Positions 13,310 through 60,332 of a DNA stretch of 64,000 bases are shown in pieces. Source of the stretch: Octopus vulgaris (lineage: Eukaryota); the NCBI GenBank assembly GCA_951406725.2, contig OX597823.1:117056001-117120000 (forward strand), given 5' to 3'. A program made the translations under genes and the position numbers. The first letter of the stretch is position 1; every line of letters begins with the position of its first letter. A model generated the notes under the pieces. The model saw only the letters and a list, made by a program, of their open reading frames with translations. It was not told the DNA's origin and ran no database searches.

Positions 13310-13545
13310 ACATACATATAAATAGTTAATCCAAACATGAAAACACAAAGAGAAAACACAACAATGTGAAGACATGGAACAAATATAGTGTTATTGGATG
13401 CTCAGGAAAGGAAAGGAAAGAAAGAAGGAGGATTTAATGTTCCGAATGGAGCTCTTCATCAGAAACATAGGAAAAGGAAAGACCCAAGGAAAGGAAGATG
13501 GAGGAAAAAAAAATCGCCAACAATACACACGCGGTCACATATTGA
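13310..13545 (-). mobile_element. Penelope-like terminal-repeat fragment with degenerate hammerhead motif
   Basis: Minus strand TTTCTGATGAAGAGCTCCATTCGGAACATTAAA at 13433-13466; (TA)n upstream; similar layout to 25439-25610. Confidence 0.4.
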
Positions 13546-13746
13546 ATGACCAGAAGGGAATGGGTGAAGAAAAAGTTCTTTCAAAGACAGGAGAGTGCAA
13601 GAGAAGGAGGTATGTGTGGGTATGTGCGTGCGCGCAAGTCCGAGTGTGTGTGTGTGGTGTATGTGTGTATATGTATGTGTGTGTGTAATGATAGCACGTG
13701 TGTGTGTGTGTGGTTGTGGCTGTTAATCTGTGTGTGGTGGGGCTAT

Positions 13747-13777
<31 letters not shown>

Positions 13778-13780
<3 letters not shown>

Positions 13781-15334
13781 CATCATCATCGTTTAGCGTC
13801 TGCGTTCCATGCTAGTATGGGTTGGACGGTTCAACTGCGGTCTGGGAAGCCACATGGCTGCACCAGGCCCAGTCTGATCTGGCAAAGTTTCTACGGCTGG
13901 ATGCCCTTCCTAACGCCAACCACTCCATGAGTGTAGTGGGAGCATTTTACGTGCCACCGGCACGGAGGCCAGGCAAGGCTGGCAACGGCCATGATCGGAT
14001 GGTGCTTTTTACATGCCACCGGCACGTGGCCAGTCGGGGCGGCACTGGCAACAGCCACATTCGGATGGTTCTCTTACGTACCACCAGCACTGGTATCACA
14101 ACTGCAATTTCCATTGATGTTGATCGATTTTGATTTTGATTTTGGATTTTCACTTGCCTCAACAGGTCTTCACAAGTAGAGTTTTGTGTCCCAAGAAGGA
14201 AAGGTATGCATAAGTGGACTGGCTACATCCCAGGTAGAGGCCATGGGTTATGGTCTCACTTGTCCTGCCGGGTCTTCTCATGCACAGCATACTTCCAAAG
14301 GTCTCAGTCTCTAGTCATTTCCTCGGTGAGACCTAAAGTTCGAAGGTCGTGCTTCACCACTTCATCCCAGGTTTTCCTGGGTGTGCCTAATCCAAAGGTT
14401 CCCTCACCGCTAGGGTGTGGCACTTTTTCACACAACTATCTTCATCCATTCTCACCACATGACCATACCAGCGCAAATGTCTCTCTTGCACACCACAACT
14501 GATGCTTCTTAGGTTCCACATTTCTCTCAAGGTACTTACACTCTGTTGAGTATGAACACTGACATTACACATCCATCGGAGCATACTGGCTTCATTTCTT
14601 GTGAGCTTACACATATCCTCAGCAGTCATGGCCCATGTTTCACTGCCATGTAGCATGGCTATTCGTACACATGCATCATACAGTCTGCCTTTTACTTTGA
14701 GCGAGAGGCCTTTTGTCACCAGCAGAGGTAAGAGCTCTCTGAACTTTGCCCAAGCTATTCTTACTCTAGCAGTTACACTTTCAGCACACCCGCCCCCGCT
14801 ACTGACTTGGTCACCTAGGTAACGGAAGCTATCAACTATTTCTAGTTTTTCTCCCTGGAATGTGGCAGAAGTTGGTCTCAGAGCATTTTCAGTGTTTATT
14901 GCTCCTGAGCATCTGCCACATACAAAAACTATCTTCCTAGTTAGCCTTCCTTTGACGTTGCTGCACCTCTTATGTGTCCAGAGCTTACACTTGGTGCATC
15001 TTATAGAGTTTCTACCTACGCTTTTTCTACAGATCGAGCAGGGCCATCTACCTGAAGGCGTTTGCGACTTGTCTACCTTCCTACTTATAAGGACTTTGGT
15101 TTTAGCTAGGTTGACTTTAAGGCCCTTCGATTCTAATCCTTGTTTCCACACCTGAAACTTCTCCTCCAGTTCTGATAGTGACTCAGCAATTAGAGCAAGG
15201 TCATCAGCATAGAGGAGCTCCCAGGGGCATCCTGTCTTGAATTCCTCCGTTATTGCCTGGAGGACTATGATAAATAGGAGGGGGCTGAGGACTGTGCCTT
15301 GGTGGACCCCTACCTCTACCCGGAATTCTTCACT
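13778..15334 (-). mobile_element. 5'-truncated RTE-clade LINE (RT C-half, PHD finger, C-terminus, 3' UTR, (ATG)n tail)
   Basis: ORF 14387-15463 encodes GVHQG..SPLLF, YADD (15200-15211), FRYLGD, WYGHVVRM; after a frameshift near 14412 it continues GTPRKTWDEVVKHDL..KTRQDK* (stop 14256-14258); 3' UTR ends in (GAT)n at ~13780. Confidence 0.9.
14256..15334 (-). pseudogene. RTE reverse transcriptase remnant with embedded C4HC3 zinc finger; the N-terminal part of the track ORF is microsatellite read-through
   Basis: RT motifs as above; finger at 14909-15040; one frameshift and one late stop. Confidence 0.85.
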
Positions 15335-16020
15335 GTATGTATACATACATATATATATATACATACATATATATATATATATACATACACACACACATAC
15401 ATACATACATACATATATATATACGCACTCTTTTATTTGTTTCGCTGATAGGTCTGTGGACATCCTGAAGCAGCTCCTTGAAGACTTTCGCTGATCAAAC
15501 CGACTGTCCTACTTACTTTCTTAAAGTCTTGTTTATATTCTATCAGTCTCTATTTTCAAGACCATTATTTTCATGGAAACATAAACAAACCAACATCAGA
15601 TATCAAATGACAAGAGGCAAACAGAAAAATGTGTACCTGCTCACATACAAACACAAGCACTCACCTGCATAAACTGTATACAACATCTCTCCACACAATT
15701 TTCTTCAACCAAAGTCATTCACAACACATAAGTCAGTTGGGATCGTGGTTAAAAATATTTTCCCAAGGTGCCAGGCTGTGAGGCTGAACCAGAATCCACA
15801 TGGTTACAAAGTAGAATTATTAACAACACACCCATGCCTGCTATACGCTTGTTGATATAAACAAGGCTATCATATATCATATTCAATAATATGCATAAAT
15901 AAGTATATATGTGTGTGTATGTATACACACAACACCCATGGGCACTCGTTCACACACACGTGCGCACACACACACACACACACAAATATATGTGTGTGTG
16001 TGTTTGTGTGTGTGTGTATA

Positions 16021-16160
16021 GTGCAGGCGTGGCTGTGTGGTAAGAAGCTTGCTTTCTAACCACATGGTTCCAGGTTCAGTCCTATTGCATTCTTCTACTA
16101 CTATAGCTTCAGGCTGACCAAAGCCTTGTGAGTGGATTTGGTAGAGGAAAACTGAAAAAC
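16021..16160 (+). mobile_element. SINE-B head
   Basis: GCAGGCGTGGCTGTGTGGTAAG..GGTTCAGTCC. Confidence 0.7.
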
Positions 16161-16198
16161 CTCTCTGTGTGTATGTAAGTATGTATGTATGTGTGTCA

Positions 16199-16560
16199 GG
16201 TCACTTTTGAGTGCTACTGGTAACATGTAACCCAGTACAACCTGATGCATGGTCGGGTCGTCGGCGACTAAACCGGCAACCGCACCAAGCTTGCTTGGTG
16301 AGGAGGGTGTTTATTGGACACCCTGCGGGATGAAAAACAAAACCCGTCAAAGGGCGGAGGATCTCTTGAGAGCCAACGGCCATCCAATAAATGTCTCAAG
16401 GCTGTATCATGCGTGGGGACATAGAAATAATCGGACTGAATACCCAATCGTGCGGTTAAACCATTGGGAGTGAAGGACTCCCAGCCTTTGTTAGAGCATC
16501 CTTCTAGGAGAAGGTAACTCAGGTAACTGGGATAACTCCGACATAAATCCTGCGGCTCAG
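16199..16560 (+). mobile_element. GC-rich segment, possibly a LINE 5' UTR fragment
   Basis: CpG-rich relative to flanks; GAGGAGGGTG..ACCCTGCGGGATGAAAAAC resembles LINE leader sequences; no ORF support. Confidence 0.25.
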
Positions 16561-16741
16561 TGGTTACCGATGATGTTGACTTGTTCTTCTTTTCGGATTA
16601 TGGCTGCCGTTGCTTATTGAGTGGGATTGATTCTGTGCACATCCTTTCCCCATTTAAAAAAAAAATCTTCTTGCACAGGCATTGCACGATAATAACATTG
16701 ATTAAGCTTCATGTAATGGCCATACTCGATATATATATAAA

Positions 16742-17298
16742 CAAGCAAAATGTCCCCCGTCCGATGGACGGTGCTGAATCATATCTGCTGAATAAAAAGC
16801 AATCAGTATTTTCTTTTCATTAAAAAATAATTAAGCATGCCTTTATTTCAATTAAATTTGAGCGCAATCGGATGGAGGATGCCCAAGATCCTAGAAGACA
16901 CACAGACAGAACGGATTTTATATAATAGACGACCATCCCATAGGCCTCTCCTTTGAGAAACACTGATTTAATCTAAATTTGAGACACCAGCAAAAGAAGA
17001 AATAAAGATAGACTTTTTTCTATTCCAAAGAAAAACGATTTTTATTCACACAAATATGCAACCGAAGTGTTTAAAGTACCAGTAAGTTCATCGCAACAGC
17101 TGATGTACTTGCACATACAAATGCACGTTCCCATGGCTTTATCGATCACATTCTCACTTGTCCTTCCTAATTTTTTCAAGACTTATACACGCCCTGATAC
17201 TGTTGGTATCTACATATCAAATTTGAGCACAATCAGATGGAGGATGCCCGAGATCCTAGAAGACACACACAGACAGACGGAAGGGATTTTATATAATA
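16742..17298 (-). mobile_element. Composite non-autonomous Helitron (two 5' ends, one 3' end)
   Basis: TATATAAAATCC..GTCTGTGTG 5' motif at ~17298 and again at 16929; 3' hairpin CCGTCC-ATC-GGACGG then CTTG|T; homologous to 41996-42371. Confidence 0.7.
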
Positions 17299-17657
17299 TA
17301 TATATATGCACATACACACACACATTAACATTCAAACATGCACATATAAGCAGATACAGATAATAACACCCTCATCAGTGATTTACATCTATTTTTGTTC
17401 GCTGGCACAGGTTGGACAGCTTTTTTGACTCAGTATTTCATGGTTGGATGCACTTCCTGTCACCAGTATTTTTAGTTGCCTTTTATAACATGCAGGGACA
17501 CGGTGTCCCTATTCTAGAACCAGAATACACACATTTAAGATATACATATACACATATACACTCATATATATATAGATACATAGATAGATAGACAGATACA
17601 GATAGATAGATAGATACAGGCATACATACATTCATACATATATATATATGTATGTAC

Positions 17658-17743
<86 letters not shown>

Positions 17744-18060
17744 GAGAATGAGTGTGTGTGTGTGTTTGTGTATGTATGTATATATAATGCACATTCATTT
17801 GTAAAGTTGGTGTGAACACATGGCTAGAATATTTAATAAATATGATTAGATTAATGGAGAATTTGGATGAAGTAATTCAACTGAGTGTTTTGACATTAAT
17901 CTGAATGGATGAGATAATAGAGTGTGAGGTTGATAGGATATCAGTAAATGCACACAACTGCTCTGTCCTTCATCGTACCGTACGAAACTGTAGCAAAACA
18001 AATGATTGTTGGTGTAATCAGGGGATGGTTTCAATGAGATCCATTGAGGAAAAAACATAA

Positions 18061-18270
18061 CTCTCTTTTACTTGTTTCAGTCACTTGACTGGGGCCATGC
18101 TGGAGCACCAGCTTTAGTCTAGCAAATCGACCCCAGGACTTATTCTTTGTGAGCCTAATGCTTATTCCATCAGTCCCTTTTGCCGAGCCGCTAAGTTACG
18201 GGGACATAAACACGCCATCATCGGTTGTCAAGCGATGTTGTGGGGGACAAACACAGACACACAAACATAT

Positions 18271-18311
<41 letters not shown>

Positions 18312-18557
18312 CCAACAGTATATTGGATAAATGATATTCCATAGTGGGTTACACCCATAACCTCTATCTTACTTTGTACTACATATATATACATTTATAC
18401 GACGGGCTTCTTTCAGTTTCCGCCTACTAAATCCACTCACAAGGCTTTGGTTGGCCTGAGGCTAAAGTAGAAGACACTTGCCTAAGATGCCATGCAGTGG
18501 GACTGAGCCCAGAATCATGTGGTTGGTGAGCAAGCTACTTACCACACAGCCACTCCT
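18061..18557 (-). mobile_element. Bipartite SINE-B with internal microsatellite
   Basis: Same architecture as 7308-7739. Confidence 0.75.
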
Positions 18558-19091
18558 CTGCCTGGAAAGAAATCTTTGGACAGTATTTCTAGCCTTGGAA
18601 ATCCACTGTTTTTATTACCAAGGGATTTTTTTCCTGTTGAAATATTTTAGTCAGAAGACAGAACAGGTGCAGGCATATGTGTGAGTGGTTGTTTATCAAG
18701 GTTGGGTGGGGGACGATAAATCTTTTATTACTTTCTGATATTGCTGTGAGCAGAATCACAGCCAAGTTCAGAGTTATTATGCAGCTGATCAATTTGCTTA
18801 GATATACCTGTACTCATAAGGATAGGAGTTTAGGGAGGCACCTGAGTGAAGGAAGTTCTTCTAGGTGATTATTTTCTTGGCCAAGCAGAGTTTCTACCAC
18901 CTACAACTGTTGAACTAAGATTTACACTTTTCCAGTATCTTCTATTTGATGTCATAGCATGCTGCATGTTTCTTCATTAACTGTATGTCTCTCTATAATT
19001 GTGACATGGTTCATCCGTTGGAAATTAAAGGTGCTCTTTGGGTTATTGAACCTGATCCTGAATGGACTTTCTGTCCTGTCCACGTATTCTT

Positions 19092-19522
19092 TTATACTCT
19101 TGGCACAAGGCTCGACATTTTAGGGGAGGGGTCCAGTCAATTAGATCGACCCCAGTACATAACTGGTACTTAATTTATCGATCCTGAAAGGATGAAAGGC
19201 AAAGTTGACCTCGACGGAATTTGAACTCAGAATGTAAAGACAGCCAAAATATCGCTAAGCATTTCACCTGGCAAGCTAACATTTCTTTTTTATTTACTGC
19301 CCACAAGGGGCTACACACAGAGGGGACAAACAAGAACAGACAAACAGATTAAGTCGATTATATTCGTTACTTATTTATTTAATCAACTTTCTTATTTAAT
19401 CGACCCCGAAAGGATGAAAGGCAAAGTTGACCTTGGCAGAATTTGAACTCAGAACGTAGTGGCAGACGAAATACCGCTAAGCATTTCGCCCGGTGAGCTA
19501 ACATTTCTGCCAGCTGACTGCC
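19092..19522 (-). mobile_element. Two adjacent SINE-A copies
   Basis: Two GAATTTGAACTCAGAA B-box complements (~19217, ~19439). Confidence 0.75.
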
Positions 19523-25058: not shown

Positions 25059-25138
25059 GTATATATATATATATATACAGAGAGAGAGAGAGAGAGATAG
25101 ATAGGTAGGTAGGTTGGTAGACAGACCGACAGACAGAC

Positions 25139-25212
<74 letters not shown>

Positions 25213-25524
25213 GCAGACAGATAAATAGATATATAGGCACAGGCATGGTAGTACGAAGTTACTTCTCAACCACAGGGTTTCAGGTTCAATTCTATTATGT
25301 GGTACATTGAGTAAGTGTATTCTGCTGTAGCCACAAGATGACCAAAACTTTTTGAGTGAATTTGATAGATGGAAACTGAAAGACATCTGTTGTATATATA
25401 TATATATATATATTTTTATGTGTGTGTGTGTGTGTGTATAGGGGGAGAATTCACAAAAGACAAAGGACAGGTGGTGTAGACAACAAACAGATGTATTAGT
25501 ATAATGCTCGAGAAGTGAAAAAGT

Positions 25525-25560
25525 CTTTAACATTTCAAGCCTACGCTCTTCCTCAGAAAG
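25525..25560 (-). ncRNA. Minimal type I hammerhead ribozyme-like motif (slightly decayed)
   Basis: CUUU-CUGAGGA-A-GAGC-GUAG-GCUU-GAA-AUGU-U-AAAG: helix I CUUU/AAAG, helix II GAGC/GCUU. Confidence 0.55.
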
Positions 25561-25619
25561 AAACAAGGAAAGAAAATAAAGAATGTGTAGTGGCTAGCGA
25601 TCTATCATAGCATATATAT

Positions 25620-26095
25620 ATCATCATCATCATCATCATCATCGTTTAACGTCCGCTTTCCATGCTAGCATGGGTTGGACGATTCAACTGGGGTCTGGCA
25701 AGCCCGAAGGCTGCACCAGATCTGGCAGTGTTTCTACAGCTGGATGCCCTTCCTAACGCCAACCACTCCGAGAGTGTAGTGGGTGATTTTATGTGCCACC
25801 GACACAGGTGCCAGACGAGACTGGCAGACAGTCACGCTCGAATGGTGTTTTTTATGTGCCACCGACACAGGTGCCAGACGAGGCTGGCAGACGGCCACGC
25901 TCGGATGGTGTTTTTTATGTGCCACCGACACAGGTGCCAGACGAGGCTGGCGAACGGCTATGATCGGATGGTGTTTGTTACGTGCCCACAGCATGGGGCC
26001 AGTCGATGCGGTACTGGCTACGGTCCCGTTCGGATGGTTTTCTTATGTGCCACCGGCACTGGTACCACAAGGATACAAATTCCATTGATGTTCAT
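25620..26095 (-). mobile_element. RTE 3'-tail repeat (family D) with 63-bp tandem units
   Basis: Units start at 25791, 25854, 25917, 25980. Confidence 0.8.
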
Positions 26096-26123
26096 CTATT
26101 TGATTTGATTCGATTTGACTTGA

Positions 26124-26158
<35 letters not shown>

Positions 26159-26198
26159 TTGACTTACTTATATATATATATATATATATATATAGACT

Positions 26199-26229
<31 letters not shown>

Positions 26230-26230
<1 letters not shown>

Positions 26231-27010
26231 GGTAACATGCCTCAATAAAAATATCATCCAATGAGGATTCCAAGTTTGTATTTATGGACTCATGCAGTAC
26301 TACCTTCAAAGCAAGAAATCGTAATCATTACTCTAGCTTTAAACCTCAAGCAAAAACTAACAGTACTTCTCTGTCTAAACTCATTCATAACCTAAAGCAT
26401 AACTCAGTTGTATACTGTATAAAATGGTCCATTGTTACCTAAGCCAAACCATACAGCGGTTATAATAACAAATGCAGTCTCTGCATTGCAGAAGAATTAT
26501 CTTTGTCCATTAATTCAGTCATTAATTAATGGACAAAGTTACCTTATTCTAAACTGCAAGCATAAATAATACAACACATTCTTAAGGTACAAACGAAGGA
26601 TGATGTGTTTCACCTCGATAATACATCAGTTAATCTTCTTACATCCCTTCTAATCTTATTTCTTCTATTTATTTATAAGCATTACCTTTTGGCATTTTTA
26701 TAAATTTCTTTTACTTTGTGGTCTCTTTATGTTTTCCTCTTTGCATGTGAGAGTCCACATGTCCATGCATGTCGTACTTCATGACCATTTTATTTCTTCA
26801 AACCTTTGTTTTTTTTATTTTGTTTTTCTTGTTTCACAACTGAGATCTGCAGTGAGTTCACTTGCGATTCTCAAATGACAATGTAACCATCATGTAATTA
26901 ATGTATTCTTGGCCTGATGACTAGCTTAGCTGAGTACTGCTCATTTCAATAATTATTACATCAGAGGATCAGCTAGCTAAGAAACATAAGCAGCCTGGAT
27001 TTTACCTGTG
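26230..27010 (+). mobile_element. Penelope-like element 3' remnant: GIY-YIG endonuclease C-terminal part plus downstream HHR-like motif
   Basis: From 26281: FMDSCSTTFKARNRNHYSSFK..NSTSLSKLIHNLK..IKWSIVT*AKPYSGYNNKCSLCIAEE, matching PLE TFK.R..NH..SF..ST.LSK.I..LK..W.I..A.PY..C.LC; CTGATGA at 26914, GAAAC at 26981. Confidence 0.75.
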
Positions 27011-27104
27011 CCATGCCATTCCCTCAATATACATATATAAGAATTTTTTGTGTAATAAGATAAAAAACCAAGGCTGTATAGATATTAGAGCATTTATAGA
27101 TAGA

Positions 27105-27158
27105 AGGTTTTACAGCTGTTTCTAGGACATTAATTAATAATATCCCTTCATCGGAGAG
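27105..27158 (-). ncRNA. Hammerhead-like motif with palindromic helix III (U4C variant)
   Basis: CCGAUGA-A-GGGAUAUUA-loop-UAAUGUCCU-A-GAA-ACAGCUGU-A; 9-bp helix II; helix I pairing poor. Confidence 0.4.
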
Positions 27159-27186
27159 GAAAAATTAAGTCATAGTTAGTTTCAAT

Positions 27187-27221
<35 letters not shown>

Positions 27222-43171: not shown

Positions 43172-43406
43172 GTGTGTGTGTGTGTTAAACAAAGAATGAC
43201 ATATAACTAATGTTTAGACCTCCATGTGTTCCATTATAGATCCATTAGTGAAGAGAGGTAGAATTATTTTTTGAAATCTTTTGCTGCTGTTTTCCGTCAA
43301 TATTTTAAATGCAGAATACATATATATTAACAAGAATGGAAATAAGTTTTTTGTGCTTACTCAAGGCATTCTTGTACATCTTTCATTATAAAAAATACCT
43401 TCTATA

Positions 43407-43641
43407 CAAGGTATTACCCAATAATCAGATTGCACCATTAGATCATCAGAAATTATATACAAAATGAAAAATTAACCTTATGTTCAACAGATACATCATT
43501 TTCACAGAATCTGCAGAAGTCAGATTCTGTAGAAACAATGAGTCTGTGAAACTAATATAAAGTCAATTAAGGCTAAGTTTTCATTTGTTATACAATTTCT
43601 GATGAATTGATGGTGCAATCTGATTGTAATGTAATACCTTG
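43407..43641. repeat. Imperfect fold-back palindrome
   Basis: Arms 43407-43480 and 43568-43641, plus inner hairpin ACAGAATCTG/CAGATTCTGT. Confidence 0.8.
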
Positions 43642-43698
43642 AGTAACAGACATTTTCATTAATGAAACATGCGTAAGAATGTATTTGATAAATTCCAG

Positions 43699-43789: not shown

Positions 43790-43966
43790 GCTAGCTAGCT
43801 AGCTGTCTATCAATCTATCTATCTATCTATTTATCTCTGTTTGTATGTATGATGTATGTGTGTGTATGTATGTATGTATACATACACACACACACATACT
43901 CAAACTCACAAACACATACATATTCAGATAGACAGACAGATAGAAAAAGTGCAGAAAAAACATAAA

Positions 43967-44336
43967 TTTCACAAATAGCTCATAACTTAATTAAATTCAA
44001 CAGCTGTTTCATTAGCAGTAAACATCATTAATTCCATAGATATATAATTAAGATATTTAATTAATTAAATGATTGTAGATTAAATTAATTTTGTTTATCC
44101 CCATTCAGCAAGCATATTATGAGTGTTAATCAGAATCCATTATTGAAATAGATTCTGAATAATGTAACCAGAAATATTCTCAATAATTGGAGATAAACAT
44201 CATTTTCACTTTATTTAATTAAAATTAATTTAATTTGATTAAATACATATCTTAATTAAGTAATTATGGAATTAATGATGCTCATTGCTAATGAAACAGC
44301 TATTGAGTGTAATTAAATTATGAGATATTTATGAAA
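43967..44336. repeat. Diverged inverted repeat (~120-bp arms, ~130-bp spacer)
   Basis: Arms 43967-44092 and 44221-44336 align as reverse complements. Confidence 0.75.
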
Positions 44337-44574
44337 CTTCTGCTTTTTATTCTGCTTTTTATTTGAAATATGCTACTCTAAATGATCATTTTAACTGAGT
44401 ATCTATTTACCTGTTAGGCATTCCTCCACCTGGATTTACTACAATGGTATAATATATTGGAGTTTAATGACCTATTGTTTGAACCCTAATTATCATGCAT
44501 ATATTTTTTGATGTTTATACACCACTTCTCTCTCCCTACCCCCCTCTCTCTCTCTTTCTCTATATATATATATA

Positions 44575-45050: not shown

Positions 45051-45149
45051 TCATATATATTTATAAATAAGGATAAGATCGATATTTAAATATCGATTTC
45101 ATCAAGTGGCCAGCATGAGAATGAAAACCTTACAAAGGTAATAATTATT

Positions 45150-45382
45150 TAAAATTATAAATTAGGGTACCTGAGAGATACCACTATACTGAAATAGCAG
45201 TCAAAACCTGACCCTAAAGCCACATTAAATGTTCATATAGGAGAGTAGACAGAGATACAAAATAAACTAGCAAATGTCTACTCTCCTAGTGCTATATGAA
45301 CATCTAATGTGGCTTTAGGGTCATGTTTTGACTGCTATTTCAGTATAGTGGTATCTCTCAGGTACCCTAATTTATAATTTTA
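45150..45382. repeat. Near-perfect fold-back palindrome
   Basis: Arms 45150-45251 and 45275-45382; 2 mismatches and one 6-nt indel. Confidence 0.9.
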
Positions 45383-45400
45383 CATGTATATATATATATA

Positions 45401-47079: not shown

Positions 47080-47304
47080 TATTGGCTCAATGGGTTCCTC
47101 ACAAACGTTCCAGGTCATTCAAATAACTCTTTTGTCTTAATAACAGTCAATCACACAGAAATTCCCCTTTGTTTTAACAGTCATTTTCATAGCATTTCTT
47201 CTGATGGCTGGATAACTGAAGAGATGGGGGCATGGATTTCCACCCGGACATCCAAAACTCAGAGTTTTATCATGGCTACCAAATAATTGTCTCATATTAC
47301 ATTT

Positions 47305-47310
<6 letters not shown>
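47080..47310 (+). mobile_element. Single-arm relative of the 52750-52985 palindrome with decayed HHR motif
   Basis: 47192-47308 aligns with 52868-52984; GAUAA-CUGAAGA..[A]AAAC-UCAGA-GUU-UUAUC at 47211-47271; (TA)n flanks. Confidence 0.7.
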
Positions 47311-47353
<43 letters not shown>

Positions 47354-48240: not shown

Positions 48241-48277
<37 letters not shown>

Positions 48278-51708: not shown

Positions 51709-51752
<44 letters not shown>

Positions 51753-52114: not shown

Positions 52115-52161
<47 letters not shown>

Positions 52162-52195
52162 TTACATATAAGAGTATAAAGTATACGTACGCTGC

Positions 52196-52429
52196 TATAT
52201 ATATAAAATACAAAATGGGACAAGAATGCAAAACATCCAAATGGACGATACAAAAAATACAGATGTGTCATTCGAAGCCTTTAATCTTCAGTCAAGAACC
52301 AGATCGTCCTCAGCCGAAATTGTGAGGATGATCCGGTTCTTGACCGAAGATTAAAGGCTTCGAATGACACATCCGTGTTTTTTGTATCGTCCATTTGGAT
52401 GTTTTGCATTCTTGTCCCATTTTGTATTT

Positions 52430-52439
<10 letters not shown>
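52196..52439. repeat. Near-perfect fold-back palindrome in (TA)n
   Basis: 117-bp arms (52196-52312, 52323-52439), 10-nt loop, 5 mismatches. Confidence 0.92.
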
Positions 52440-52467
<28 letters not shown>

Positions 52468-52749
52468 TCGAATAGAGGTTAGAGTAGCCTCATTAAGGGA
52501 TAAAAAATATCCAATGAATTACGAGTTCATTGTCTATTATTTTTTTTTTTTTTGTGAATAGTAGTATTTGTAAATAAAAAGCTTAAGTAGAAATCTTCAT
52601 TTATAAATATTCAAATTAAAATTCAGAAAATGGAGATGTAGCATTTATGTAATTTATTAACTGCAAAAATTCAACGTATATATATTGATAAAAATGGCAA
52701 GACAACAAAAGAAAGAAAGAGACCTCAATATTATGTAAATAGAGGAATT

Positions 52750-52980
52750 TATCTGTAAATGTAATATGTGACAATTATTCGGTAGCCAAGATAAAACTCT
52801 GAGTTTCGGATGCCAAGGTGGAAATCCACACCACCATCTCTTCAGTTATCCGTCCATCAGAAAAATGCATTTTTCTGATGGACGGATAACTGAAGAAATG
52901 GTGGTGTGGATTTCCACCTCGGCATATGAAACTCGGAGTTTGATCATGGCTACCGAATAATTGTCACATATTACATTTAC

Positions 52981-52985
<5 letters not shown>
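52750..52985. mobile_element. Spacer-less palindrome carrying mirror-image hammerhead-like motifs
   Basis: Centre between 52867/52868, 7 mismatches, no indels; HHR-like at 52790-52850 (-) and 52885-52945 (+). Confidence 0.85.
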
Positions 52986-53017
<32 letters not shown>

Positions 53018-53864: not shown

Positions 53865-54745
53865 TAAGTTAAGTTGAGTTAAGTTAAATTTTTGGCTCAA
53901 AATGCAAAAAGCAAGGCCATGTAGTGGGACATGGAGTTATGTACAGGGAGGGTGTTCATGCAAAGAGTTCAGGCTATTTCTGGTCAAGAGTGACTTTGAA
54001 CCAAGCGGTTGTCGGCATCTTCACTATCTCGTCTGGCAGCTTATTCCACGGATCCGCAACCCGGATGGAGAAAGCCCCTCTCCTTCGATTGAGATGAAAT
54101 CGTCACAGATAGAGCTTTTCGGAGTGACCCCACAGCCAACGCTCTGGAGCAGGAGTGAAGAACAGATTCCCGTACTCCAATATGGGTCTCACCAGCATGA
54201 CATAGAGCAGTAGGAATATGGCTGCTGTGAGCGTTCCGAATGACCGTCGAATCAAAAACAGAGCTCTGTGTGCTTTGTTGGTAGCATGGACGCACTGGGC
54301 CAAAGGCAAAAAGGAAGAATCCACCAAGATAGCCAGGTCCTTTACCTGGTCGGTCCTCTCCAGCAGCAGACGACCCGGCTCGAAATCAAGTTGAGTTGCA
54401 GGAGAAGAGCCAACAGGCAGATGACAGCACTTTGACACATTCAGACACAGGTCCCATTCATTAGACCATCTCCAAACTTGTTGGAGACATCAACGAAGAT
54501 CAGCTGTATCACCGTGAGGAGCGACCAGTTTGACATCATCGGCAAATAGAAGGGTATGTTGCGTGAGGTTGTCGGGCAAGTCATTTATGAAGACTAAAAA
54601 CAATAAGAACCCAAGCACTAAACCTTGAGGCATGCCACTGCTCGCACTGGAGACGTAGGACAGTGAACCATTAACTTGGACTTGGAAGGAGCGATCTGAG
54701 AGGAAGGCACCAACCCATCGTACAATATCCGGATGGATACTTGTG
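53865..54745 (-). mobile_element. 5'-truncated CR1-type LINE (RT C-half) with (AACTT)n tail
   Basis: SGMPQGLVLG.LLFL.FINDLP..LLFADDVKL..W..EW.L.LN.SKC..KDL..RPILEYG..WNKLP; internal deletion after EYG; short tandem 3' tail. Confidence 0.85.
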
Positions 54746-54769
54746 CATTTATCACACAAGTGTGTTAGT

Positions 54770-55000
54770 GGGATTACTGGCAGAATCGTTAGCATGCCGG
54801 GTGAAATGCTTAGCAGTATTTCGTCTGTTGTTACGTTCTGAGTTCAAATTCCACCGAGGTTGACTTGCCTTTCATCCTTTCAGGGTCGATAAATTAAGTA
54901 CCAGTTACGCACTGGAGTCGATATAATCGACTTAATCCGTTTGTCTGTCCTTGTTTGTCCTCTCTACGTTTAGCCCCTTGTGAGTAGTAAAGAAATAGGT
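54770..55000 (+). mobile_element. SINE-A
   Basis: Low-divergence long-tail copy. Confidence 0.8.
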
Positions 55001-55556
55001 ATTAAATATGTACTACAGTTCTCTTATTCAAATGTTCAAATCTCACAACAGCCATTGTGTTTTGCTCTTCAGCAAAATAGATAACTTTGTTCCTTTCAGT
55101 AACTCTGGATAAATGTCCACAAAGTCTTCCTGAATCTCATATTTGAATGGTTAGCAGAGGCATGAGCACTCATCTATATAAGGAGTTGCCTTTACCAAGT
55201 ACCATTCCAAGTAAGGAACATACGACAATAACATGAGACAATTACCAAATCGTTTCTAATAAAGAAAGTAATTAAGCAAATGAATAATCAGTCCTGAATA
55301 TATTTTAGGAAACCTTTATATAGACATCTGTTTACCTACAAAAAGCATTTGATTGAAAGAATACCTTGAAGGTTATCTCTGGTGTGTATGAGTATATGCA
55401 TGTGCATACAGACACACATACATATATACGTCCATACATGCATGCATACAGACCTACATACAGACACACACATTCATTCATTCATACATATATACAGACA
55501 GACAGACACACATACATTCAAACATTCTTAAAAAGAAAGGATACAGAGTAAAGTTC

Positions 55557-55795
55557 CTTTTCACGTCCCATAGACCCACAGAGTCAGTTTCGCAGGTTCT
55601 CTGGTGTATACACTCCTCCATGGATGGTGAGAAGTATATACAGGAATACTTATTTTTGCCAGCTGAGTGGACTAGAGCAACGTGAAATGAAGTGTTTTGC
55701 TCAAGACCACAATGCATTGCTCAGTCAGTCCAGGAATTGAAACCACAATCTTACAATCATGAGTCCAATACCCTAACCACTAAGCCATGCATCTC
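55557..55795 (-). mobile_element. SINE-F-like head with a different tail
   Basis: TGGCTTAGTGG A-box, GGTTTCAATTCC B-box, CTTGAGCAAAACACTTC segment; partial relative at ~60575-60745. Confidence 0.55.
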
Positions 55796-57880
55796 CACAC
55801 ATACATACATGCATAACACATACATGCATACATGCAGGCATATATACATACATGCAAGCATACATACATACATACATACATACATGCATACATACATGCA
55901 TACATATATATATATACATGCATGCATACATACAGACATACATGCATACATACATACATGCATGCATATATACATACATACATACATACATAACTATCTA
56001 CCTGCTGACATGCATACATACATGCATATTTACTTTAGATATATGTATGTATAAACGTACCTACATATATTTAAAGTAAATACTTTTATGATGAGTGCAA
56101 GGAAACTTGACGTGCTTCCTCCGCTTATTCTTAACTTTTCCCTCTCAATATTCCCAATCTGTCAACTACATCAGAAAATATTCAGAAAATATCACACTCT
56201 AACAAAAGATAATGTTCAATACTTGCAATTTTTCGTTCTACACACACATACATACATACATGTGAGTGTATGTATGCTGGAGTGTTTACATCCCCATAAC
56301 TTAGTGGTTCGGCAAAAGAAGCCGATAGAATAAGTACTAGGCTTACAAAGAATAAGTTTTGGGGTCAATTTGATCGACTAAAGGCAGTGCTCCAGCATGG
56401 CCACAGTCAAATGACTGAAAAAAGTAAAAGAGTATTTATATATATATATATATATATGATATGCTTCTTTCAGTTTTCATCTAGCATATATGCACACAAG
56501 GCTTTGGTTGACCCAGAGCTATAATAGTAGACATTTGCCCAAGGTTCCACACACAGAGACCGAACCTAATGGTTGGAAGCAAGCTTCTCAAACACACACC
56601 CATACCCACACCTACAGTTGATATAATTACATAAAATCAAAATCATATTGATTAAAGTTTAAGACTAAAGGCCTAATCGAAGGACCTTTCACAGTCTAAT
56701 AAAACAACAATTCTAAGTAATCTTAATCAAATCAATTTATTGCAAAGACCCCTGTCAGAAAATTCCAAGAAGAAGAAAAGAGATTACTCATTCAACAGTG
56801 TGCCTAACATTTCTGTAGTATGTCACAAAGTATTATATTATTATATTATCTTCAATTAATTACTAATTAATATTTACATTAATAGGAGTTATTAGTATTT
56901 ACATTATTACAAAACAAATATGAAAGTCAATTCCATAAAAGTATTTAGCGGCTTAGATAGATTCTTAGAAAGTACTTTTGAAATTAAAACATACCACTGT
57001 TTTGTTCTAGACTACAGTAATATAGTATAGACTTATGGACTTAGATATATTCTCACAGAAACAAATCGCTACCGCTGCCGCCGCCGCCGATGGTGATGGT
57101 GATTATTATTATTACTATTATTATTATTATTATTATTACTATTATTATTATTATTATTATCATCATCATCATCTGTACACATAAATACGTGTTCATGCAA
57201 AACTATATCTGTACGCACACTCAGACACATGAATATACATTTGCTTATAAATGCATATGTATTCTTTTGTATAAAACGTATATATTTTCAGCATCAGAGA
57301 ATCTCACAATTCATCCATGTTTATAATATTTGACAGGATTAGTAAATCTTACCTTGTAGCTATTATTTACATAAACTATTATTCCCAAACACAAACATTT
57401 CTAGAATCGAATGCTCATGAATATTTGTGTGTGTGTATAGCTCCTCTGATCATTCATCCATGTGTGTGTATAAACACACATGCATATACACACAGATATA
57501 TACACACATGCATATACACACATGCATATACACATGCACGCATATACACACAGATATATAAACACATGCATATACACACACATGCATATACACACAGATA
57601 TATAAACACATGCATATACACACACAGATATATACACACAGGTGAATGGTCAGAGGATGAGCAAGCAGATGCTATGTTGTGAACTTGTTTGTAGAAAGTG
57701 CCCCCAGCAGAAGCTGCAATCTATGGTTTAAGGATTGTGTAAAGTACGAATGTTGAAGGCATGTGAGATATGGAAGGTCAACTGGGAAAGCAATTCTTGT
57801 CATTACCACCAATGCACGAAAAAAAGGAATCGAAAGTATGGGTCTTTCTGTAGAAACACACCCACACAAATATAATTTAA

Positions 57881-58054
57881 CCCTTTGGCATTCAGATTAC
57901 TGTCAAATGTAATGCTTATTTATTCACATTGTCTTGGATTGATCATGCATTATCTCATAGCTTTGAGATTTTGATGATGTTATTGTATATTTCTAGAATG
58001 ACATTGTAGTATAGGAGTGAGAGGTCAGATCTGGCCAGTTGAAATGCTAAAGAG
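57881..58054. mobile_element. piggyBac-like MITE
   Basis: TTAA|CCCTTTGGCATTC ... AAATGCTAAAGAG|TTAA. Confidence 0.7.
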
Positions 58055-58199
58055 TTAAGCAAGATGTTCAAAAACATAGCAGCAGTGTAGTGAGAGGAGG
58101 AAGTTTAGTCTGCAGTATTTGATGGCATGTATATTTATCAAGAGCTGGGTTCATTAGTCACCAGTGGAGTCACAAATATAAAGTATAATTTTGTCCAAT

Positions 58200-58480
58200 T
58201 GCACAATGTTCTTAAGAGTCAGTGATGGTCTTCCTCTGTCTTGAGTGGACAGCCATGATATACTTATATACAGACATATGTAAAGACGTCAACAAGAGAC
58301 TATGACATTACAACCAGCCAGGCAAAGTCTTCGCTACATTTGCAACACCTGCCAGCGGGAGTGTTTGTCCAGGATAGGACTACACAGCTACAGCAGGAAA
58401 TGTATCAGGACATGAAATGTAAAGGCTGGACTAGATTATTCTATGCGCAACTCCATTGTCTCCCGAGACAAAAAGAATGC

Positions 58481-58485
<5 letters not shown>
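58200..58485 (+). mobile_element. RTE (BovB-like) LINE 3' end remnant
   Basis: YICNTCQRECLSRIGLHSYSRKC finger; 3' end CCATTGTCTCCCGAGAC. Confidence 0.65.
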
Positions 58486-58519
<34 letters not shown>

Positions 58520-59175
58520 TACTTCCATGTGACTGGTGCCTGGTCAGCCATGATCTTTCATTCTTGGCCTGACTGCCGACCGTCAACATGTCTTGTGTCC
58601 ATCTCCCATGTTCCTACCTTTAGGCTTTTACTTCATACACACCACCTCAATTTGAATTGTTATTTCTTGTTGTTATATTCGTAATTGTGTACCATGTTCT
58701 CCGTTTTTTTGTTTGTTTGACTTTTCATCTTTGTTGCTGTACACATTTGCTAGATTTCTTATAAAGGGGTCTAATGCTCTTAGCTTATACTTTTTTGGGG
58801 ACAACCAGATCGAACCATCTCAAGTGTAACTGTCCAAAATGGTCGTGACTTCTGGTACTTGACTGATGAAAGATAGCTAAGAAAAACCCGTCTTTTTTTG
58901 CCTGTCCTCCTAGTTGTTGTTTCTCTTGTCCGCCTTTGTGTCATCTGTCTGTCCAAACGTTTTAATGCCCTCTATTGCGTTTTTGTTCCATTATATATAT
59001 ATATTTATATTAAACTTACCTGTTAGTACAAATTCTGTGTGTGTTGTATTCTATTTCTTAATACATGTCAAAATTAAACAGAGAATACAACCTGGCAACC
59101 ACACCAGACTCTGAGGGTGGAGTCTTCGACTTGGCCTGAGCATGGACTCAAACTCAAATGAAATGAAATGAAATG

Positions 59176-59401
59176 AAATGAAAAAGTATGGTAAATAAAC
59201 AAATGAAATAACATAGACTGAATGTAAAAACAAATGGGAGACAAACAGAAGGTCCATATCTCTTCATCAGTTATTGACCAATTGAGTTTTGTACCAATTG
59301 GTTGATAACTGTCAAAGGATTACAGACCCTTTTGTCTCCTGTTTGTTTTTGCATTCACTATACATTATGTTGTTTGTTTATTTATCATACATTTTTCATT
59401 T
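59176..59401. repeat. Diverged fold-back palindrome
   Basis: Arms 59176-59284 and 59295-59401, 10-nt loop. Confidence 0.75.
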
Positions 59402-59531
59402 ATTAGATACATATGTGTGTGTGTGTGTGTATATTTGTATGTATGTATGAATGTAAGTATGTATGTATGTATGCATATATATATATACATATTTATGTTT
59501 GTGTGTGTATATATATATATATATATATGTA

Positions 59532-59798
59532 AATTGCAGCATGGACGCTGTTTATAAGCCATTTAAAAACACACTAAAACTGTTAGATTTACTTCAACAT
59601 TTAAATTCAATTTGCCAAAATATTTTCATCACTTTGAGACCGCAACCTTTTCACTGACAAAATTCCATGCTGCATCTGATGAACTAACTGTTACTTTCTC
59701 AGATGCAGCATGGAATTTATTAAATTTAAATGTTGAAGTGAATCTAATGGTTTTTGTGTGTTTTTAAATGGCTTATAAACACCTTCCATGCTGCAATT
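59532..59798. repeat. Fold-back palindrome with a one-sided ~50-nt extra segment
   Basis: Outer arms begin AATTGCAGCATGGA / end TCCATGCTGCAATT; inner stem 59660-59679 / 59699-59718. Confidence 0.85.
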
Positions 59799-59870
59799 GT
59801 TTTTGTTTCAGCACAGGATCTCAGATTAGGTCACTTGCTATGCAAGTACATCTCCTTAATATATATATAT

Positions 59871-60332
59871 GTCAGTCATTAGAAAAGTGCTCTAGCAATG
59901 CTGGTGCTGACTAGCACCCTCCATCACTTTAGTAACAACTATATTTGTGGCCTTTTGGTTGTAAATTGTGAATAGCCACCTTAATAATTTATAATTCTCA
60001 CTTCACTGTTTTCGGAATCAGTCAGTGTTTCCTATGCTGTTCTCTATAAGACTGACAAGGTGACCAAGGTTCTTTATGCCCTTGGTGACAGAGTAATGGG
60101 TCACTGATGAAGATTAATCAAATCTGAAATCAGCGCTGATATGACTCCTTCACGATTGTCATAGGGAGTTTGTCTCTCTTGTCAGTCATTAGAAAAGTGC
60201 TTTCATGTGGCTAAGAGTTGTTTTGACTCTTATTTCTAGCAATGCTGGTGTGGACTAGCACCCTCTGTCACTTTAGTGATGTCTACACTTGTTGCTTTTG
60301 GTTGTAAATTGCAAATAGCCACCTTAATAATT

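What the first reader, a model, noticed from the sequence alone, without database searches (positions are those of the whole stretch)
13433..60162. Window-wide system: ~8 hammerhead-like motifs plus 7 long fold-back palindromes, many beside (TA)n
HHR-like cores occur at 13433(-), 25525(-), 26914(+), 27105(-), 47211(+), 52790(-), 52885(+) and 60098(+), from at least five unrelated sequence families. Palindromes of ~230-370 bp occur at 43407, 43967, 45150, 52196, 52750, 59176 and 59532 and cluster in three patches. Several adjoin (TA)n, and a Penelope GIY-YIG remnant is present at 26281. Established: Penelope-like elements carry hammerheads in their pseudo-LTRs and often insert with inverted termini. 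Inference: a diverse set of non-autonomous, ribozyme-bearing, hairpin-forming Penelope derivatives favouring TA microsatellites, giving many potential dsRNA and self-cleavage sites.
Basis: inference. Interest (0 to 1): 0.75.

Follow-up and report, generated by a model that had tools for sequence, protein, structure and literature searches.

The report
Penelope-type retroelement insertions in TA repeats
This stretch of a very repeat-rich (probably cephalopod) genome has been hit again and again, at TA microsatellites, by Penelope-like retrotransposons and short gene-less elements that insert the same way, which explains both the hammerhead-ribozyme-like motifs and most of the long palindromes; it is a real but already known kind of mobile DNA.

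Summary
All seven palindromes exist. Rfam finds no hammerhead. My own descriptor finds one canonical type I hammerhead (60098-60147) and two more full three-helix layouts with an exact core, against 0.017 expected. Consensus sequences built from other genomic copies keep the layout in four families, A, B, D and E; B' was judged by eye.

Family A (47113-47310 and both arms of the 52685-53003 palindrome) is the 3' end of a GIY-YIG-encoding retroelement: at least 15 genomic places carry ORF, 3' UTR and family A contiguously. The ORF features match the published Hydra clade of Penelope-like elements.

Palindromes at 52196, 52732 and 59532 have constant outer ends in (TA)n, a variable centre and a one-sided tail. 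That is the Penelope-type signature, not a MITE signature. (TA)n adjacency is 9 of 13 units against 1.45 expected.

Limits: only one motif is canonical. Cleavage and dsRNA are unproven. The palindromes at 43367, 43944 and 59172 are unassigned, and 45147 is only partly characterised.

The scan has already reported Penelope-type hammerhead SINEs elsewhere in this genome. This is a new member of a known kind.

The parts
13323..13538 (-). Family B' copy, about 215 bp in the window (family consensus about 250 bp); core CUGAUGA at 13462. In this copy GAAA has decayed to GGAAC.
   Evidence: seven copies are bounded by (TA)n or TG/TA-rich simple repeats. By eye the consensus reads GUUU-CUGAUGA-A-GAGC-UCC-GCUC-GAAA-CG-UU-AAAU, a PLE min-HHR layout. 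Six copies occur in about 280 kb of unrelated loci.
25441..25611 (-). Family B copy (about 205-bp family) with a hammerhead-like module; core CUGAGGA at 25556.
   Evidence: At least 3826 genomic candidates. It passes the relaxed descriptor. The family consensus has CUGUGGA, i.e. A6 to U. Copies are flanked by (TA)n or (CA)n.
26228..27026 (+). Decayed, 5'-truncated 3' part of a GIY-YIG retroelement. Coding remnant at about 26261-26640; 3' UTR with a decayed hammerhead-like motif, core at 26914.
   Evidence: 77 candidates at 70-80% identity. Sister copies carry the CxCX5C linker, a GIY-YIG-like ORF and a CxxC..E motif. The 3' UTR is shared with L077, L085, L079 and L081. The ORFs are collinear with the 723-aa protein P0087.
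27027..27189 (-). Family D copy, 5'-truncated. Hammerhead-like module with core CCGAUGA at 27154 and helix III palindrome ACAGCUGU.
   Evidence: At least 3028 candidates, many with inverted partners. The consensus passes the relaxed descriptor with one core mismatch. Copies reach about 530 bp.
43367..43681 (.). Palindrome P1: old, low copy number, mobiliser unknown.
   Evidence: few hits, 64-80% identity. Not next to (TA)n.
43944..44359 (.). Palindrome P2: inverted dimer of a unit of about 130-180 bp. The unit also occurs as single copies elsewhere.
   Evidence: Not next to (TA)n; it sits beside (TCTA)n and (TATG)n tracts.
45147..45385 (.). Palindrome P3: young inverted dimer (arms 97% complementary) of a unit of about 130 bp; (TA)6 at its right end.
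   Evidence: at least 1413 candidates, both single-arm copies (query 1-128, about 90% identity) and palindromic copies. Adjacency.
47113..47310 (+). Family A single copy, i.e. a 5'-truncated 3' end of the GIY-YIG element, ending in (AT)n. Hammerhead-like core at 47216.
   Evidence: Matches L002 positions 1421-1617 (bases 1322-1518 of the 1518-base representative L002:100-1617) at 86% identity. Contiguity with the ORF is shown.
52160..52439 (.). Palindrome P4: a twin insertion, with its 36-bp one-sided tail at 52160-52195.
   Evidence: At least 3269 candidates. Outer ends are constant in (TA)n, the centre junction varies, and the tail (GCAGCGTACGTACAC...) lies on one side only in the copies that carry it (about 6 of the 9 aligned).
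52685..53003 (.). Palindrome P5: two head-to-head 5'-truncated copies of family A. The left arm carries the 3' extension present in the longer form of the family A end. Hammerhead-like cores at 52845(-) and 52890(+).
59172..59404 (.). Palindrome P6: old, unassigned. CUGAUGA is present near its centre but no full hammerhead layout.
   Evidence: No other copy appears among the 40 scored candidates.
59532..59860 (.). Palindrome P7: a twin insertion with a 60-bp one-sided tail at 59799-59858. Each arm carries a min-HHR-like module with G3/C8 in place of C3/G8. The left-arm copy has its core at 59654(-).
   Evidence: At least 6068 candidates. The centre varies while the ends are constant. Descriptor hit with two core mismatches. 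Family members appear in RNA-seq.
59873..60335 (+). Family E: a 1.4-mer of a 344-bp unit lying between (TA)n tracts.
   Evidence: At least 1960 candidates, as partial tandems and inverted partners. GC content 39%.
60098..60147 (+). Canonical type I hammerhead. Helix I GGGUCA/UGACUC; core CUGAUGA; helix II AGAUU/AAUCU; GAAA; palindromic helix III AUCAGCGCUGAU. Predicted cleavage is after A at 60141.
   Evidence: Strict descriptor. The consensus of 13-17 copies keeps every core base.

Best explanation
The window is repeat-rich DNA in which (TA)n microsatellites have been repeatedly used as landing sites by Penelope-like retroelements (PLEs), and by short non-coding families that integrate in the same way. 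[quoted passage not shown]

The hammerhead-like cores are the ribozyme modules these elements carry near their 3' ends:
- one canonical type I hammerhead (family E, a 344-bp unit in partial tandem, resembling a retrozyme or a PLE pseudo-LTR);
- PLE-type minimal hammerheads with the hallmark extra base after A9 (families B' and B);
- variant or dead versions (families A, D and P7, and the decayed PLE 3' UTR).

Three palindromes (52196, 52732, 59532) are twin insertions. An inverted 5'-truncated copy is joined head to head with a second copy, both 3' ends sit in (TA)n, and a short tail lies on one side. The palindrome at 45147 shows only part of this pattern.

Shown here: the family structures, their copy numbers, the contiguity of family A with a GIY-YIG ORF, and the (TA)n enrichment.

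Inferred from the literature: the endonuclease nicks (TA)n, reverse transcription is primed on the target, and a template switch or second-strand event creates the inverted twin.

Not shown: that any of these RNAs self-cleaves or forms dsRNA in vivo.
For: HAMMERHEAD MODULES
- One canonical site, and three exact-core full layouts against 0.017 expected.
- Consensus sequences made without the window's own copies keep the layout in A, B, D and E. B' was read by eye from the alignment consensus, which includes the window copy.
- Family E conserves every core base across 13-17 copies.
- The extra nucleotide between A9 and 10.1, the G10.1-C11.1 pair and palindromic 15.2-16.2 are the published hallmarks of PLE min-HHRs. 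So are motifs found on opposite strands 100-700 bp apart (PMC4209133).

LINK TO PLEs
- At least 15 genomic places match L002:100-1617 end to end, covering GIY-YIG ORF, 3' UTR and family A.
- ORF pieces are collinear with P0087, a 723-aa protein carrying DKT, YRDDG, FLD.., CxC and GIY-YIG-like motifs, CxxC..E and N..CxH. These match the Hydra-clade description in PMC8557442.
- Atlas neighbours of the P0087 N-terminal part carry RVT_1 and HTH_animal.

INSERTION ARCHITECTURE
- P4, P5 and P7 have constant ends in (TA)n, variable centre junctions and one-sided tails of 36-65 bp.
- Single-arm and dimer copies coexist for P3 and P2.
- This matches the published PLE architecture: an inverted 5'-truncated copy, a 30-40-bp tail and a microsatellite bias (PMC8557442).

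(TA)n ADJACENCY
- 9 of 13 units against 1.45 expected.
Against: - Rfam's hammerhead models score nothing here, even for the canonical site (none among the listed matches).
- Folding energies are no better than those of shuffled sequences.
- Pfam finds no RT domain in P0087 or P0142. GIY-YIG matches are all below the gathering score.
- Families B, B', D, E, P3, P4 and P7 are tied to PLEs only by insertion style and motif, not by sequence identity with a coding element.
- The B and D consensus cores carry single changes at invariant positions.
- P1, P2 and P6 show neither (TA)n adjacency nor a PLE link.
- No read ends pile up at the predicted cleavage site, though depth there was only 0-7.
Confidence: 0.75

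Rival explanations
1. The palindromes are MITE or foldback-type non-autonomous DNA transposons, for example Tc1/mariner-like elements with a TA target-site duplication. Their long terminal inverted repeats would make the hairpins, and their TA target preference would place them in (TA)n.
For: Hairpin shape and TA-rich flanks. In the P4 family every scored copy is a full palindrome.
Against: In P4, P5 and P7 the centre junction differs from copy to copy while the outer ends are constant. One arm is a variably 5'-truncated copy of the other, and a tail lies on one side only. Family A arms are the 3' end of a coding GIY-YIG retroelement. Single-arm copies exist for P2 and P3.
Confidence: 0.1
2. 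The hammerhead-like cores are chance matches to a short consensus inside ordinary repeats and have nothing to do with ribozymes.
For: There are 54 CUGANGA matches in the window. No Rfam hit (none among the listed matches). Folding z-scores are unremarkable. Five of the eight sites fail even the relaxed descriptor. With two core mismatches allowed, shuffles give 1.25 hits per window, which covers 56185 and, taken alone, 59654.
Against: Exact-core full layouts number 3 against 0.017 expected. Four independent family consensuses keep the layout. The deviations coincide with published PLE min-HHR hallmarks that my descriptor did not require: which base is extra, G10.1-C11.1, and palindromic helix III (PMC4209133). 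Two motifs lie in the sense-strand 3' UTR of GIY-YIG elements.
Confidence: 0.07
3. The short families are ordinary LINE-dependent SINEs with microsatellite tails. On this view the inverted pairs arise by LINE twin priming, and Penelope enzymes play no part.
For: The genome holds RTE-type LINEs (ORF at 14390-15508) and tRNA-derived SINEs that also sit in (TA)n. Several family B copies end in (CA)n, which could be a tail.
Against: (TA)n lies on both sides of full-length and truncated copies, which indicates a target rather than a tail. Twin priming yields an inverted 5' segment joined to a different 3' segment, not two copies of the same 3' end with a one-sided extension. None of the families shares sequence with a LINE 3' end in the data at hand. 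Family A is itself a GIY-YIG element.
Confidence: 0.08

Closest known systems
Hydra clade of Penelope-like elements (Craig, Yushenova, Rodriguez and Arkhipova 2021, PMC8557442)
   Same: C-terminal GIY-YIG-type endonuclease, with no CCHH motif evident on inspection. CxCX5C linker. CxxC and CxH motifs around the conserved E and N. DKT motif, seen in the homologue P0087. Insertion into (TA)n. Hammerhead motif near the 3' end. Inverted 5'-truncated partner copies and one-sided tails, which the paper describes as typical PLE insertion features (for Naiads). Reported from Mollusca among other aquatic invertebrates.
   Different: Placement in the clade rests on motifs, not on a tree. The hammerhead of family A is not canonical: it has a bulged C between helix II and GAAA. 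The tails seen here (36-65 bp) are somewhat longer than the 30-40 bp quoted.
Minimal hammerheads of metazoan PLEs (Cervera and de la Pena 2014, PMC4209133)
   Same: Type I layout. Helix I of 4-7 bp. An extra nucleotide between A9 and 10.1. A G10.1-C11.1 pair. A very short palindromic helix III, implying action as dimers. Many sequence-unrelated families per genome. Pairs on opposite strands a few hundred bp apart. A published U3-A8 covariant of the C3-G8 core pair.
   Different: Here family P7 shows G3-C8, not U3-A8. The B and D consensuses have single non-compensated core changes. Most motifs sit in short non-coding families rather than in recognisable pseudo-LTRs.
Non-LTR retrozymes of animals (Cervera and de la Pena 2020, PMC7229834; proposed PLE origin in bioRxiv 10.64898/2026.07.22.740005)
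   Same: Family E has a canonical type I hammerhead, a 344-bp unit, low GC (39%), tandem arrangement and thousands of copies.
   Different: Most copies seen are only 1.3- to 2.4-mers with a single ribozyme, often with an inverted partner and (TA)n flanks. Circular RNA is not shown.
MITEs and foldback DNA transposons
   Same: Short, abundant, hairpin-forming, TA-rich insertion sites.
   Different: No fixed terminal inverted repeats with target-site duplications. The centre varies, the arms are 5'-truncated, and the tail is one-sided. One family is the end of a retroelement.

Membership tests
Hammerhead ribozyme, type I (canonical) | Core CUGANGA ... GAAA ... UH with helices I, II and III in the type I order | tested here: met
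   60098-60147 only (strict descriptor). The family consensus keeps it.
Hammerhead ribozyme, type I (canonical) | Reaches the Rfam gathering score of a hammerhead model | tested here: not met
   No hammerhead row at the gathering score, none among the 150 listed matches at E<=10 in the whole window, and none at E<=10 in the seven small loci. The loop-less palindromic helix III is probably penalised by the models.
Hammerhead ribozyme, type I (canonical) | Self-cleavage at the UH site | tested here: inconclusive
   RNA reads show no pile-up of ends, but depth at 60090-60179 was only 0-7.
PLE minimal hammerhead (PMC4209133) | Extra nucleotide between A9 and 10.1, with a G10.1-C11.1 closing pair | tested here: met
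   B' consensus CUGAUGA-A-GAGC..GCUC. B. P7 GUGAACA-G-GUCGC..GCGAC. Not met in A or D, where the extra base lies 3' of helix II.
PLE minimal hammerhead (PMC4209133) | Short palindromic helix III (15.2-16.2) | tested here: met
   B and B' ACGU; D ACAGCUGU; P7 AAUAUU; the PLE 3' UTR ACAUAUGU; E AUCAGCGCUGAU.
PLE minimal hammerhead (PMC4209133) | Intact catalytic core in the family consensus | tested here: inconclusive
   Intact in B', A and E. B has A6 to U, D has U4 to C, and P7 has G3/C8.
PLE minimal hammerhead (PMC4209133) | Located in the terminal repeat or 3' region of a PLE | tested here: inconclusive
   Met for family A and for 26914. No coding partner was found for B, B', D, E or P7.
Hydra-clade Penelope-like element (PMC8557442) | [quoted passage not shown] | tested here: inconclusive
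   The endonuclease part and the region between RT and endonuclease were read in this genome's copies. GIY-YIG Pfam matches are below the cut-off. The RT was seen only as motifs in the homologue P0087 and through Atlas neighbours with RVT_1. Pfam finds no RT.
Hydra-clade Penelope-like element (PMC8557442) | CxCX5C linker; CxxC and CxH motifs around the conserved E and N; no CCHH motif | tested here: met
   L081 CSCKRPISC and L083 CSCRHPTSC. L002 CGLCDME. P0087 CDLCVSEK...NKRTEILESCRH. Judged by inspection against the text.
Hydra-clade Penelope-like element (PMC8557442) | Insertion into (TA)n | tested here: met
   Both ends of the full-length 470-bp copy in L009 abut (TA)n.
Hydra-clade Penelope-like element (PMC8557442) | Groups with Hydra families in an RT phylogeny | not tested
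   No reference Hydra sequences and no RT from this genome were at hand.
Non-LTR retrozyme (PMC7229834) | Type I hammerhead within tandem repeats of about 170-400 bp and low GC | tested here: met
   Family E: 344-bp unit, 1.3- to 2.4-mers; GC 39%.
Non-LTR retrozyme (PMC7229834) | Expressed as unit-length linear and circular RNA | tested here: inconclusive
   The joint 60278 to 59950 in three RNA runs fits a tandem copy or a circle equally well.
MITE or foldback DNA transposon | Fixed terminal inverted repeats flanked by a target-site duplication, with the same internal structure in all copies | tested here: not met
   P4, P5 and P7 have a variable centre, 5'-truncated arms and a one-sided tail. 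Not examined for P1, P2, P3 and P6.

The most novel reading that the evidence does not exclude
The hammerhead fold, rather than its catalysis, may be the handle by which the Penelope reverse transcriptase picks its template. On this reading many unrelated non-coding RNAs have become Penelope-dependent, SINE-like parasites simply by carrying a min-HHR-shaped module. That would include catalytically dead versions (B with A6 to U, D with U4 to C) and a compensated G3-C8 version (P7). Together these families would make up a sizeable part of this 2.8-Gb genome and seed it with thousands of hairpins.
Probability: 0.2. Interest if true: 0.65.

Novelty: new member of a known kind. Interest (0 to 1): 0.4.

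Why it matters
The result explains several abundant repeat families as Penelope-type insertions. It links a coding GIY-YIG element directly to one of the palindromes. It also supplies one intact hammerhead family and several natural core variants that could be tested for cleavage.

If the short families really depend on Penelope enzymes, part of what is counted as SINE or unknown repeat in cephalopod-size genomes belongs to a third class of retrotransposon. The twin insertions would then be a steady source of long hairpins in transcripts.

None of this is new in kind. Minimal hammerheads, (TA)n targeting and inverted twin copies are published features of Penelope-like elements.

Tried and rejected
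- Rfam at the gathering score, at E<=10 on the whole window, and on small loci found no hammerhead; the rows are microsatellite or hairpin look-alikes of miRNA models.
- Single-sequence folding of six candidate modules gave z-scores between -1.4 and +1.1, which is uninformative.
- Pfam on long homologues (P0087, P0142 and others) found no family, even at E<=10.
- All-against-all BLAST of the family representatives found no shared sequence apart from microsatellites, so the families are unrelated at the sequence level.
- RNA reads from three raw-read runs gave no cleavage-site pile-up. P7-family reads occur in both orientations, which could reflect unstranded libraries or read-through. This is no evidence for or against dsRNA.
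- P4 and P3 units were inspected for hammerheads. P4 has CUGAAGA...GAAU and P3 has CUGAGAG, so neither is a hammerhead. P6 has CUGAUGA but no GAAA in register.
- The hit at 56185(-), with one core mismatch, was taken as chance.
- In L074 a GIY-YIG ORF lies upstream of a P7 copy but is separated from it by a long (TA)n, so this was not taken as a link.
- The supplementary files of PMC8557442 are not held.
- After no more genome letters could be fetched, so the flanks of P1, P2, P3 and P6 in other copies, and the RT part of the family A parent, were not read.

Full report
SETTING. The window is G000:C10:117056001-117120000 of a 2.8-Gb assembly in 227 contigs. It is AT-rich (29-43% GC) and full of microsatellites (137 TRF rows). 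The repeat content, with tRNA-derived SINEs of a type I know from octopus genomes, suggests a cephalopod. That is my own knowledge and was not tested.

OBSERVATION: PALINDROMES. All seven palindromes are recovered at the stated places. Arm complementarity is 78% (43367), 79% (43944), 97% (45147), 96% (52196), 90% with no spacer (52732), 78% (59172) and 91% (59532).

OBSERVATION: HAMMERHEAD-LIKE CORES.
- The bare core is not informative. CUGANGA occurs 54 times on the two strands.
- Rfam reports no hammerhead at the gathering score. There is none among the 150 listed of the 284 whole-window matches at E<=10 (the other 134 were not shown), and none at E<=10 in seven 220-310-nt loci cut around the eight sites.
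- I therefore wrote descriptors. The strict type I descriptor requires an exact core, contiguous helices I, II and III, and a UH site. It passes only 60104(+), against 0.025-0.3 expected in dinucleotide shuffles.
- Allowing one extra nucleotide next to helix II, with an exact core, passes 25556(-), 52845(-) and 60104(+). That is 3 against 0.017 expected in block shuffles.
- With up to two core mismatches, 56185(-) and 59654(-) are added, but shuffles then give 1.25 hits per window, so those two are not significant on their own.

OBSERVATION: FAMILIES BEHIND THE EIGHT SITES. They fall into five sequence-unrelated families.
- B/B': 13462 and 25556.
- The 3' UTR of the GIY-YIG remnant: 26914.
- A: 47216, 52845 and 52890.
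- E: 60104.

Consensus sequences built from other genomic copies, leaving out the window's own, keep the whole layout.
- A: exact core, one extra C before GAAA.
- B: A6 to U, extra A after A9.
- D: U4 to C, extra A before GAAA.
- E: fully canonical.

Further points on individual families:
- The B' consensus reads CUGAUGA-A-GAGC-UCC-GCUC-GAAA-CG-UU. Position N7 varies between U and C among copies, as expected for the one free core position. This consensus includes the window copy and was read by eye.
- Family E keeps every core base in 13-17 copies that are otherwise only 79-86% identical.
- The four available copies of the GIY-YIG 3' UTR point to an ancestral ...CUGAUGA...GCUAA-GAAA-CAUAUGU-A-GCC. 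It has the palindrome ACAUAUGU as helix III but a mismatch at 10.1-11.1.

WHAT THE DEVIATIONS MEAN. Cervera and de la Pena (PMC4209133) describe the minimal hammerheads of metazoan Penelope-like elements (PLEs). Their features are:
- a conserved G10.1-C11.1 pair;
- palindromic 15.2-16.2;
- helix I of 4-5 bp;
- extreme sequence diversity within a genome;
- pairs on opposite strands 100-700 bp apart;
- a U3-A8 covariant of the core pair.

Families B', B and P7 show exactly the first three features, none of which my descriptor demanded. The P7 consensus reads AAUUUUGUCA-GUGAACA-G-GUCGC..GCGAC-GAAA-AAUAUU-U-UGGCAAAUU. Its only two core differences are C3 to G and G8 to C, which keep that pair complementary. 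By my rough estimate only a few percent of double changes would do this.

LINK TO PENELOPE-LIKE ELEMENTS.

(a) The remnant at 26228-27026.
- It begins at a (TA)n tract (26126-26226) and reads ...SCSTTFKARNRNHYSSF...KCSLCIAEE in frame.
- The family has 77 genomic candidates at 70-80% identity.
- Sister copies have ORFs with a CxCX5C linker, [IV]VYKCTV...YIGSCSTTFK..R...NH and C.LC..E. Pfam GIY-YIG matches are weak (E=4e-4, below cut-off). Atlas neighbours carry GIY-YIG and HTH_animal.
- The similarity runs on to about 27009 in L077, L085 and L081. The 26914 motif therefore lies in the sense-strand 3' UTR.

(b) Family A.
- In locus L002 a GIY-YIG-type ORF lies 0.9 kb upstream of the family A end on the same strand, with no microsatellite between.
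- A search with L002:100-1617 found at least 15 genomic places that match the 1518 bases end to end at 78-87% identity, and many 5'-truncated ones.
- Family A is therefore the 3' terminus of this coding element.

(c) The protein.
- The ORF has 4687 representative relatives at E<=0.001.
- A 723-aa relative, P0087, carries ADKT, FDI..FYP, YRDDG, FLD...YRPF.K..GR.FL.L..KHFP, CNC, a GIY-YIG-like block, CDLCVSEK and NKRTEILESCRH.
- Pieces of this genome's copies align collinearly to it: L002 frame 1 to residues 498-546 (E=2e-12), L078 to 341-421 (E=2e-7) and L083 to 588-646 (E=1e-6).
- These motifs match the description of the Hydra clade of PLEs. That description lists DKT in place of DKG, a CxCX5C linker, CxxC and CxH around the conserved E and N, no CCHH, elements under 3 kb, insertion into (TA)n, hammerheads, and presence in Mollusca.
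- Pfam sees no RT in P0087. Atlas neighbours of its residues 100-500 carry RVT_1 and HTH_animal. I did not make a tree.

THE PALINDROMES.
- P5 (52685-53003) is two family A ends joined head to head. In other loci the partner arm is truncated at different points. A longer form of the 3' end, extended by about 65 bp, occurs on some copies.
- P7 (59532-59860, at least 6068 candidates) has in every copy a left arm ending CAATTG at (TA)n. Its right arm runs on for 60 bp (TTTTCGTTCC...CTCCGTA) before (TA)n. The centre differs from copy to copy.
- P4 (52160-52439, at least 3269 candidates) is built the same way. A 36-bp tail, GCAGCGTACGTACAC..., lies on one side beyond a (TA)n stretch in about 6 of the 9 aligned copies.
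- P3 (at least 1413 candidates) and P2 occur both as single arms of about 130 bp and as inverted dimers.
- P1 is old and rare. P6 gave no other copy among the scored candidates.

Constant 3' ends, variable 5' truncation, an inverted partner and a one-sided tail are the PLE insertion hallmarks described by Craig et al..

(TA)n. Positions within 15 bp of (TA)>=5 make up 5.8% of the window. Four of seven palindromes, and 9 of 13 units, have an end there, against 0.76 and 1.45 expected (P about 0.004; 0 of 5000 placements). Some ends were defined by the repeat finder and include TA bases. The three patches are places where several elements piled into one microsatellite. For example, P7, family E and their flanking (TA)n form one nest at 59475-60389.

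FAMILY E. The window copy is a 1.4-mer of a 344-bp unit (positions 31-131 repeat at 375-474). Other copies are 1.3- to 2.4-mers, often with an inverted partner. GC content is 39%. This is what animal non-LTR retrozymes look like (PMC7229834). A 2026 preprint proposes that such retrozymes derive from PLE terminal repeats.

RNA.
- Three raw-read RNA-seq runs of the same species label were laid on 59100-60420 at 82% likeness or more.
- Most reads are under 95% alike, so they come from other family members.
- The P7 family is well covered (depth 100-500) in both orientations. Reads cross hairpin centres at various junctions, as expected from the variable genomic copies.
- The hammerhead of family E has depth 0-7, and no place shows many molecule ends.
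- A joint 60278 to 59950 in all three runs fits a tandem copy or a circle.
- Cleavage and dsRNA therefore remain open.

VERDICT.
- The reading as Penelope derivatives that favour TA microsatellites is right for family A, the 26228 remnant, P4, P5 and P7. It is plausible for B, B', D, E and P3. It is open for P1, P2 and P6.
- Only one motif is a canonical ribozyme.
- The kind is known (PMC4209133, PMC8557442), so this is a new member of a known kind.
- Earlier notes of this scan on other pieces of the same genome describe tRNA-headed SINEs with Penelope-type hammerheads, inverted double insertions and a U3-A8 variant. I used them as leads only. My results agree with them in outline.

Noticed in passing
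window 7580-7707 (-), 8737-8900 (+), 8980-9146 (+): Copies of a tRNA-derived SINE (GGCGYAGGAGTGGCTGTGTGG...) lie between (TA)n tracts. They form an inverted pair with 181-nt arms, 93% complementary and 1.1 kb apart. My descriptor found no hammerhead-like layout in them.
   Followed up: partly
window 59600-59665 (-) and the P7 family consensus (loci L063-L075): A min-HHR-like module whose only core differences are C3 to G and G8 to C. It would be a compensated variant of the core pair for which a U3-A8 variant is published.
   Followed up: partly
window 60278 to 59950 (RNA reads): Reads of three RNA-seq runs join 60278 back to 59950, with 8 extra letters between. This is the junction expected for tandem or circular forms of the 344-bp family E unit.
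   Followed up: no
window 13323-13538 and loci L007, L029, L037, L064, L066, L067: Family B' turned up six times in about 280 kb of loci fetched for other reasons. It probably has tens of thousands of copies.
   Followed up: partly
window 25787-25986: A 63-bp tandem repeat (3.2 copies, 91% matches) lies inside a longer repeat that also gives long spurious ORFs (25662-26108).
   Followed up: no
window 14390-15508 (-): An open frame of 373 aa with reverse-transcriptase motifs of an RTE-type LINE. It is the only long ORF of the window.
   Followed up: no
window 56185 (-): A further hammerhead-like layout with one core mismatch (CUGAAUA). It is within the chance expectation and was not assigned to a family.
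   Followed up: no
L074:258-701 and L072:2730-3281: Other PLE-type pieces lie near P7 copies: a canonical-looking GIY-YIG block (LYAIRCERCHKDYIGQT) and an RT fragment (RVT_1, E=2e-6). They are separated from the P7 copies by (TA)n. Several PLE lineages therefore share these microsatellites.
   Followed up: partly
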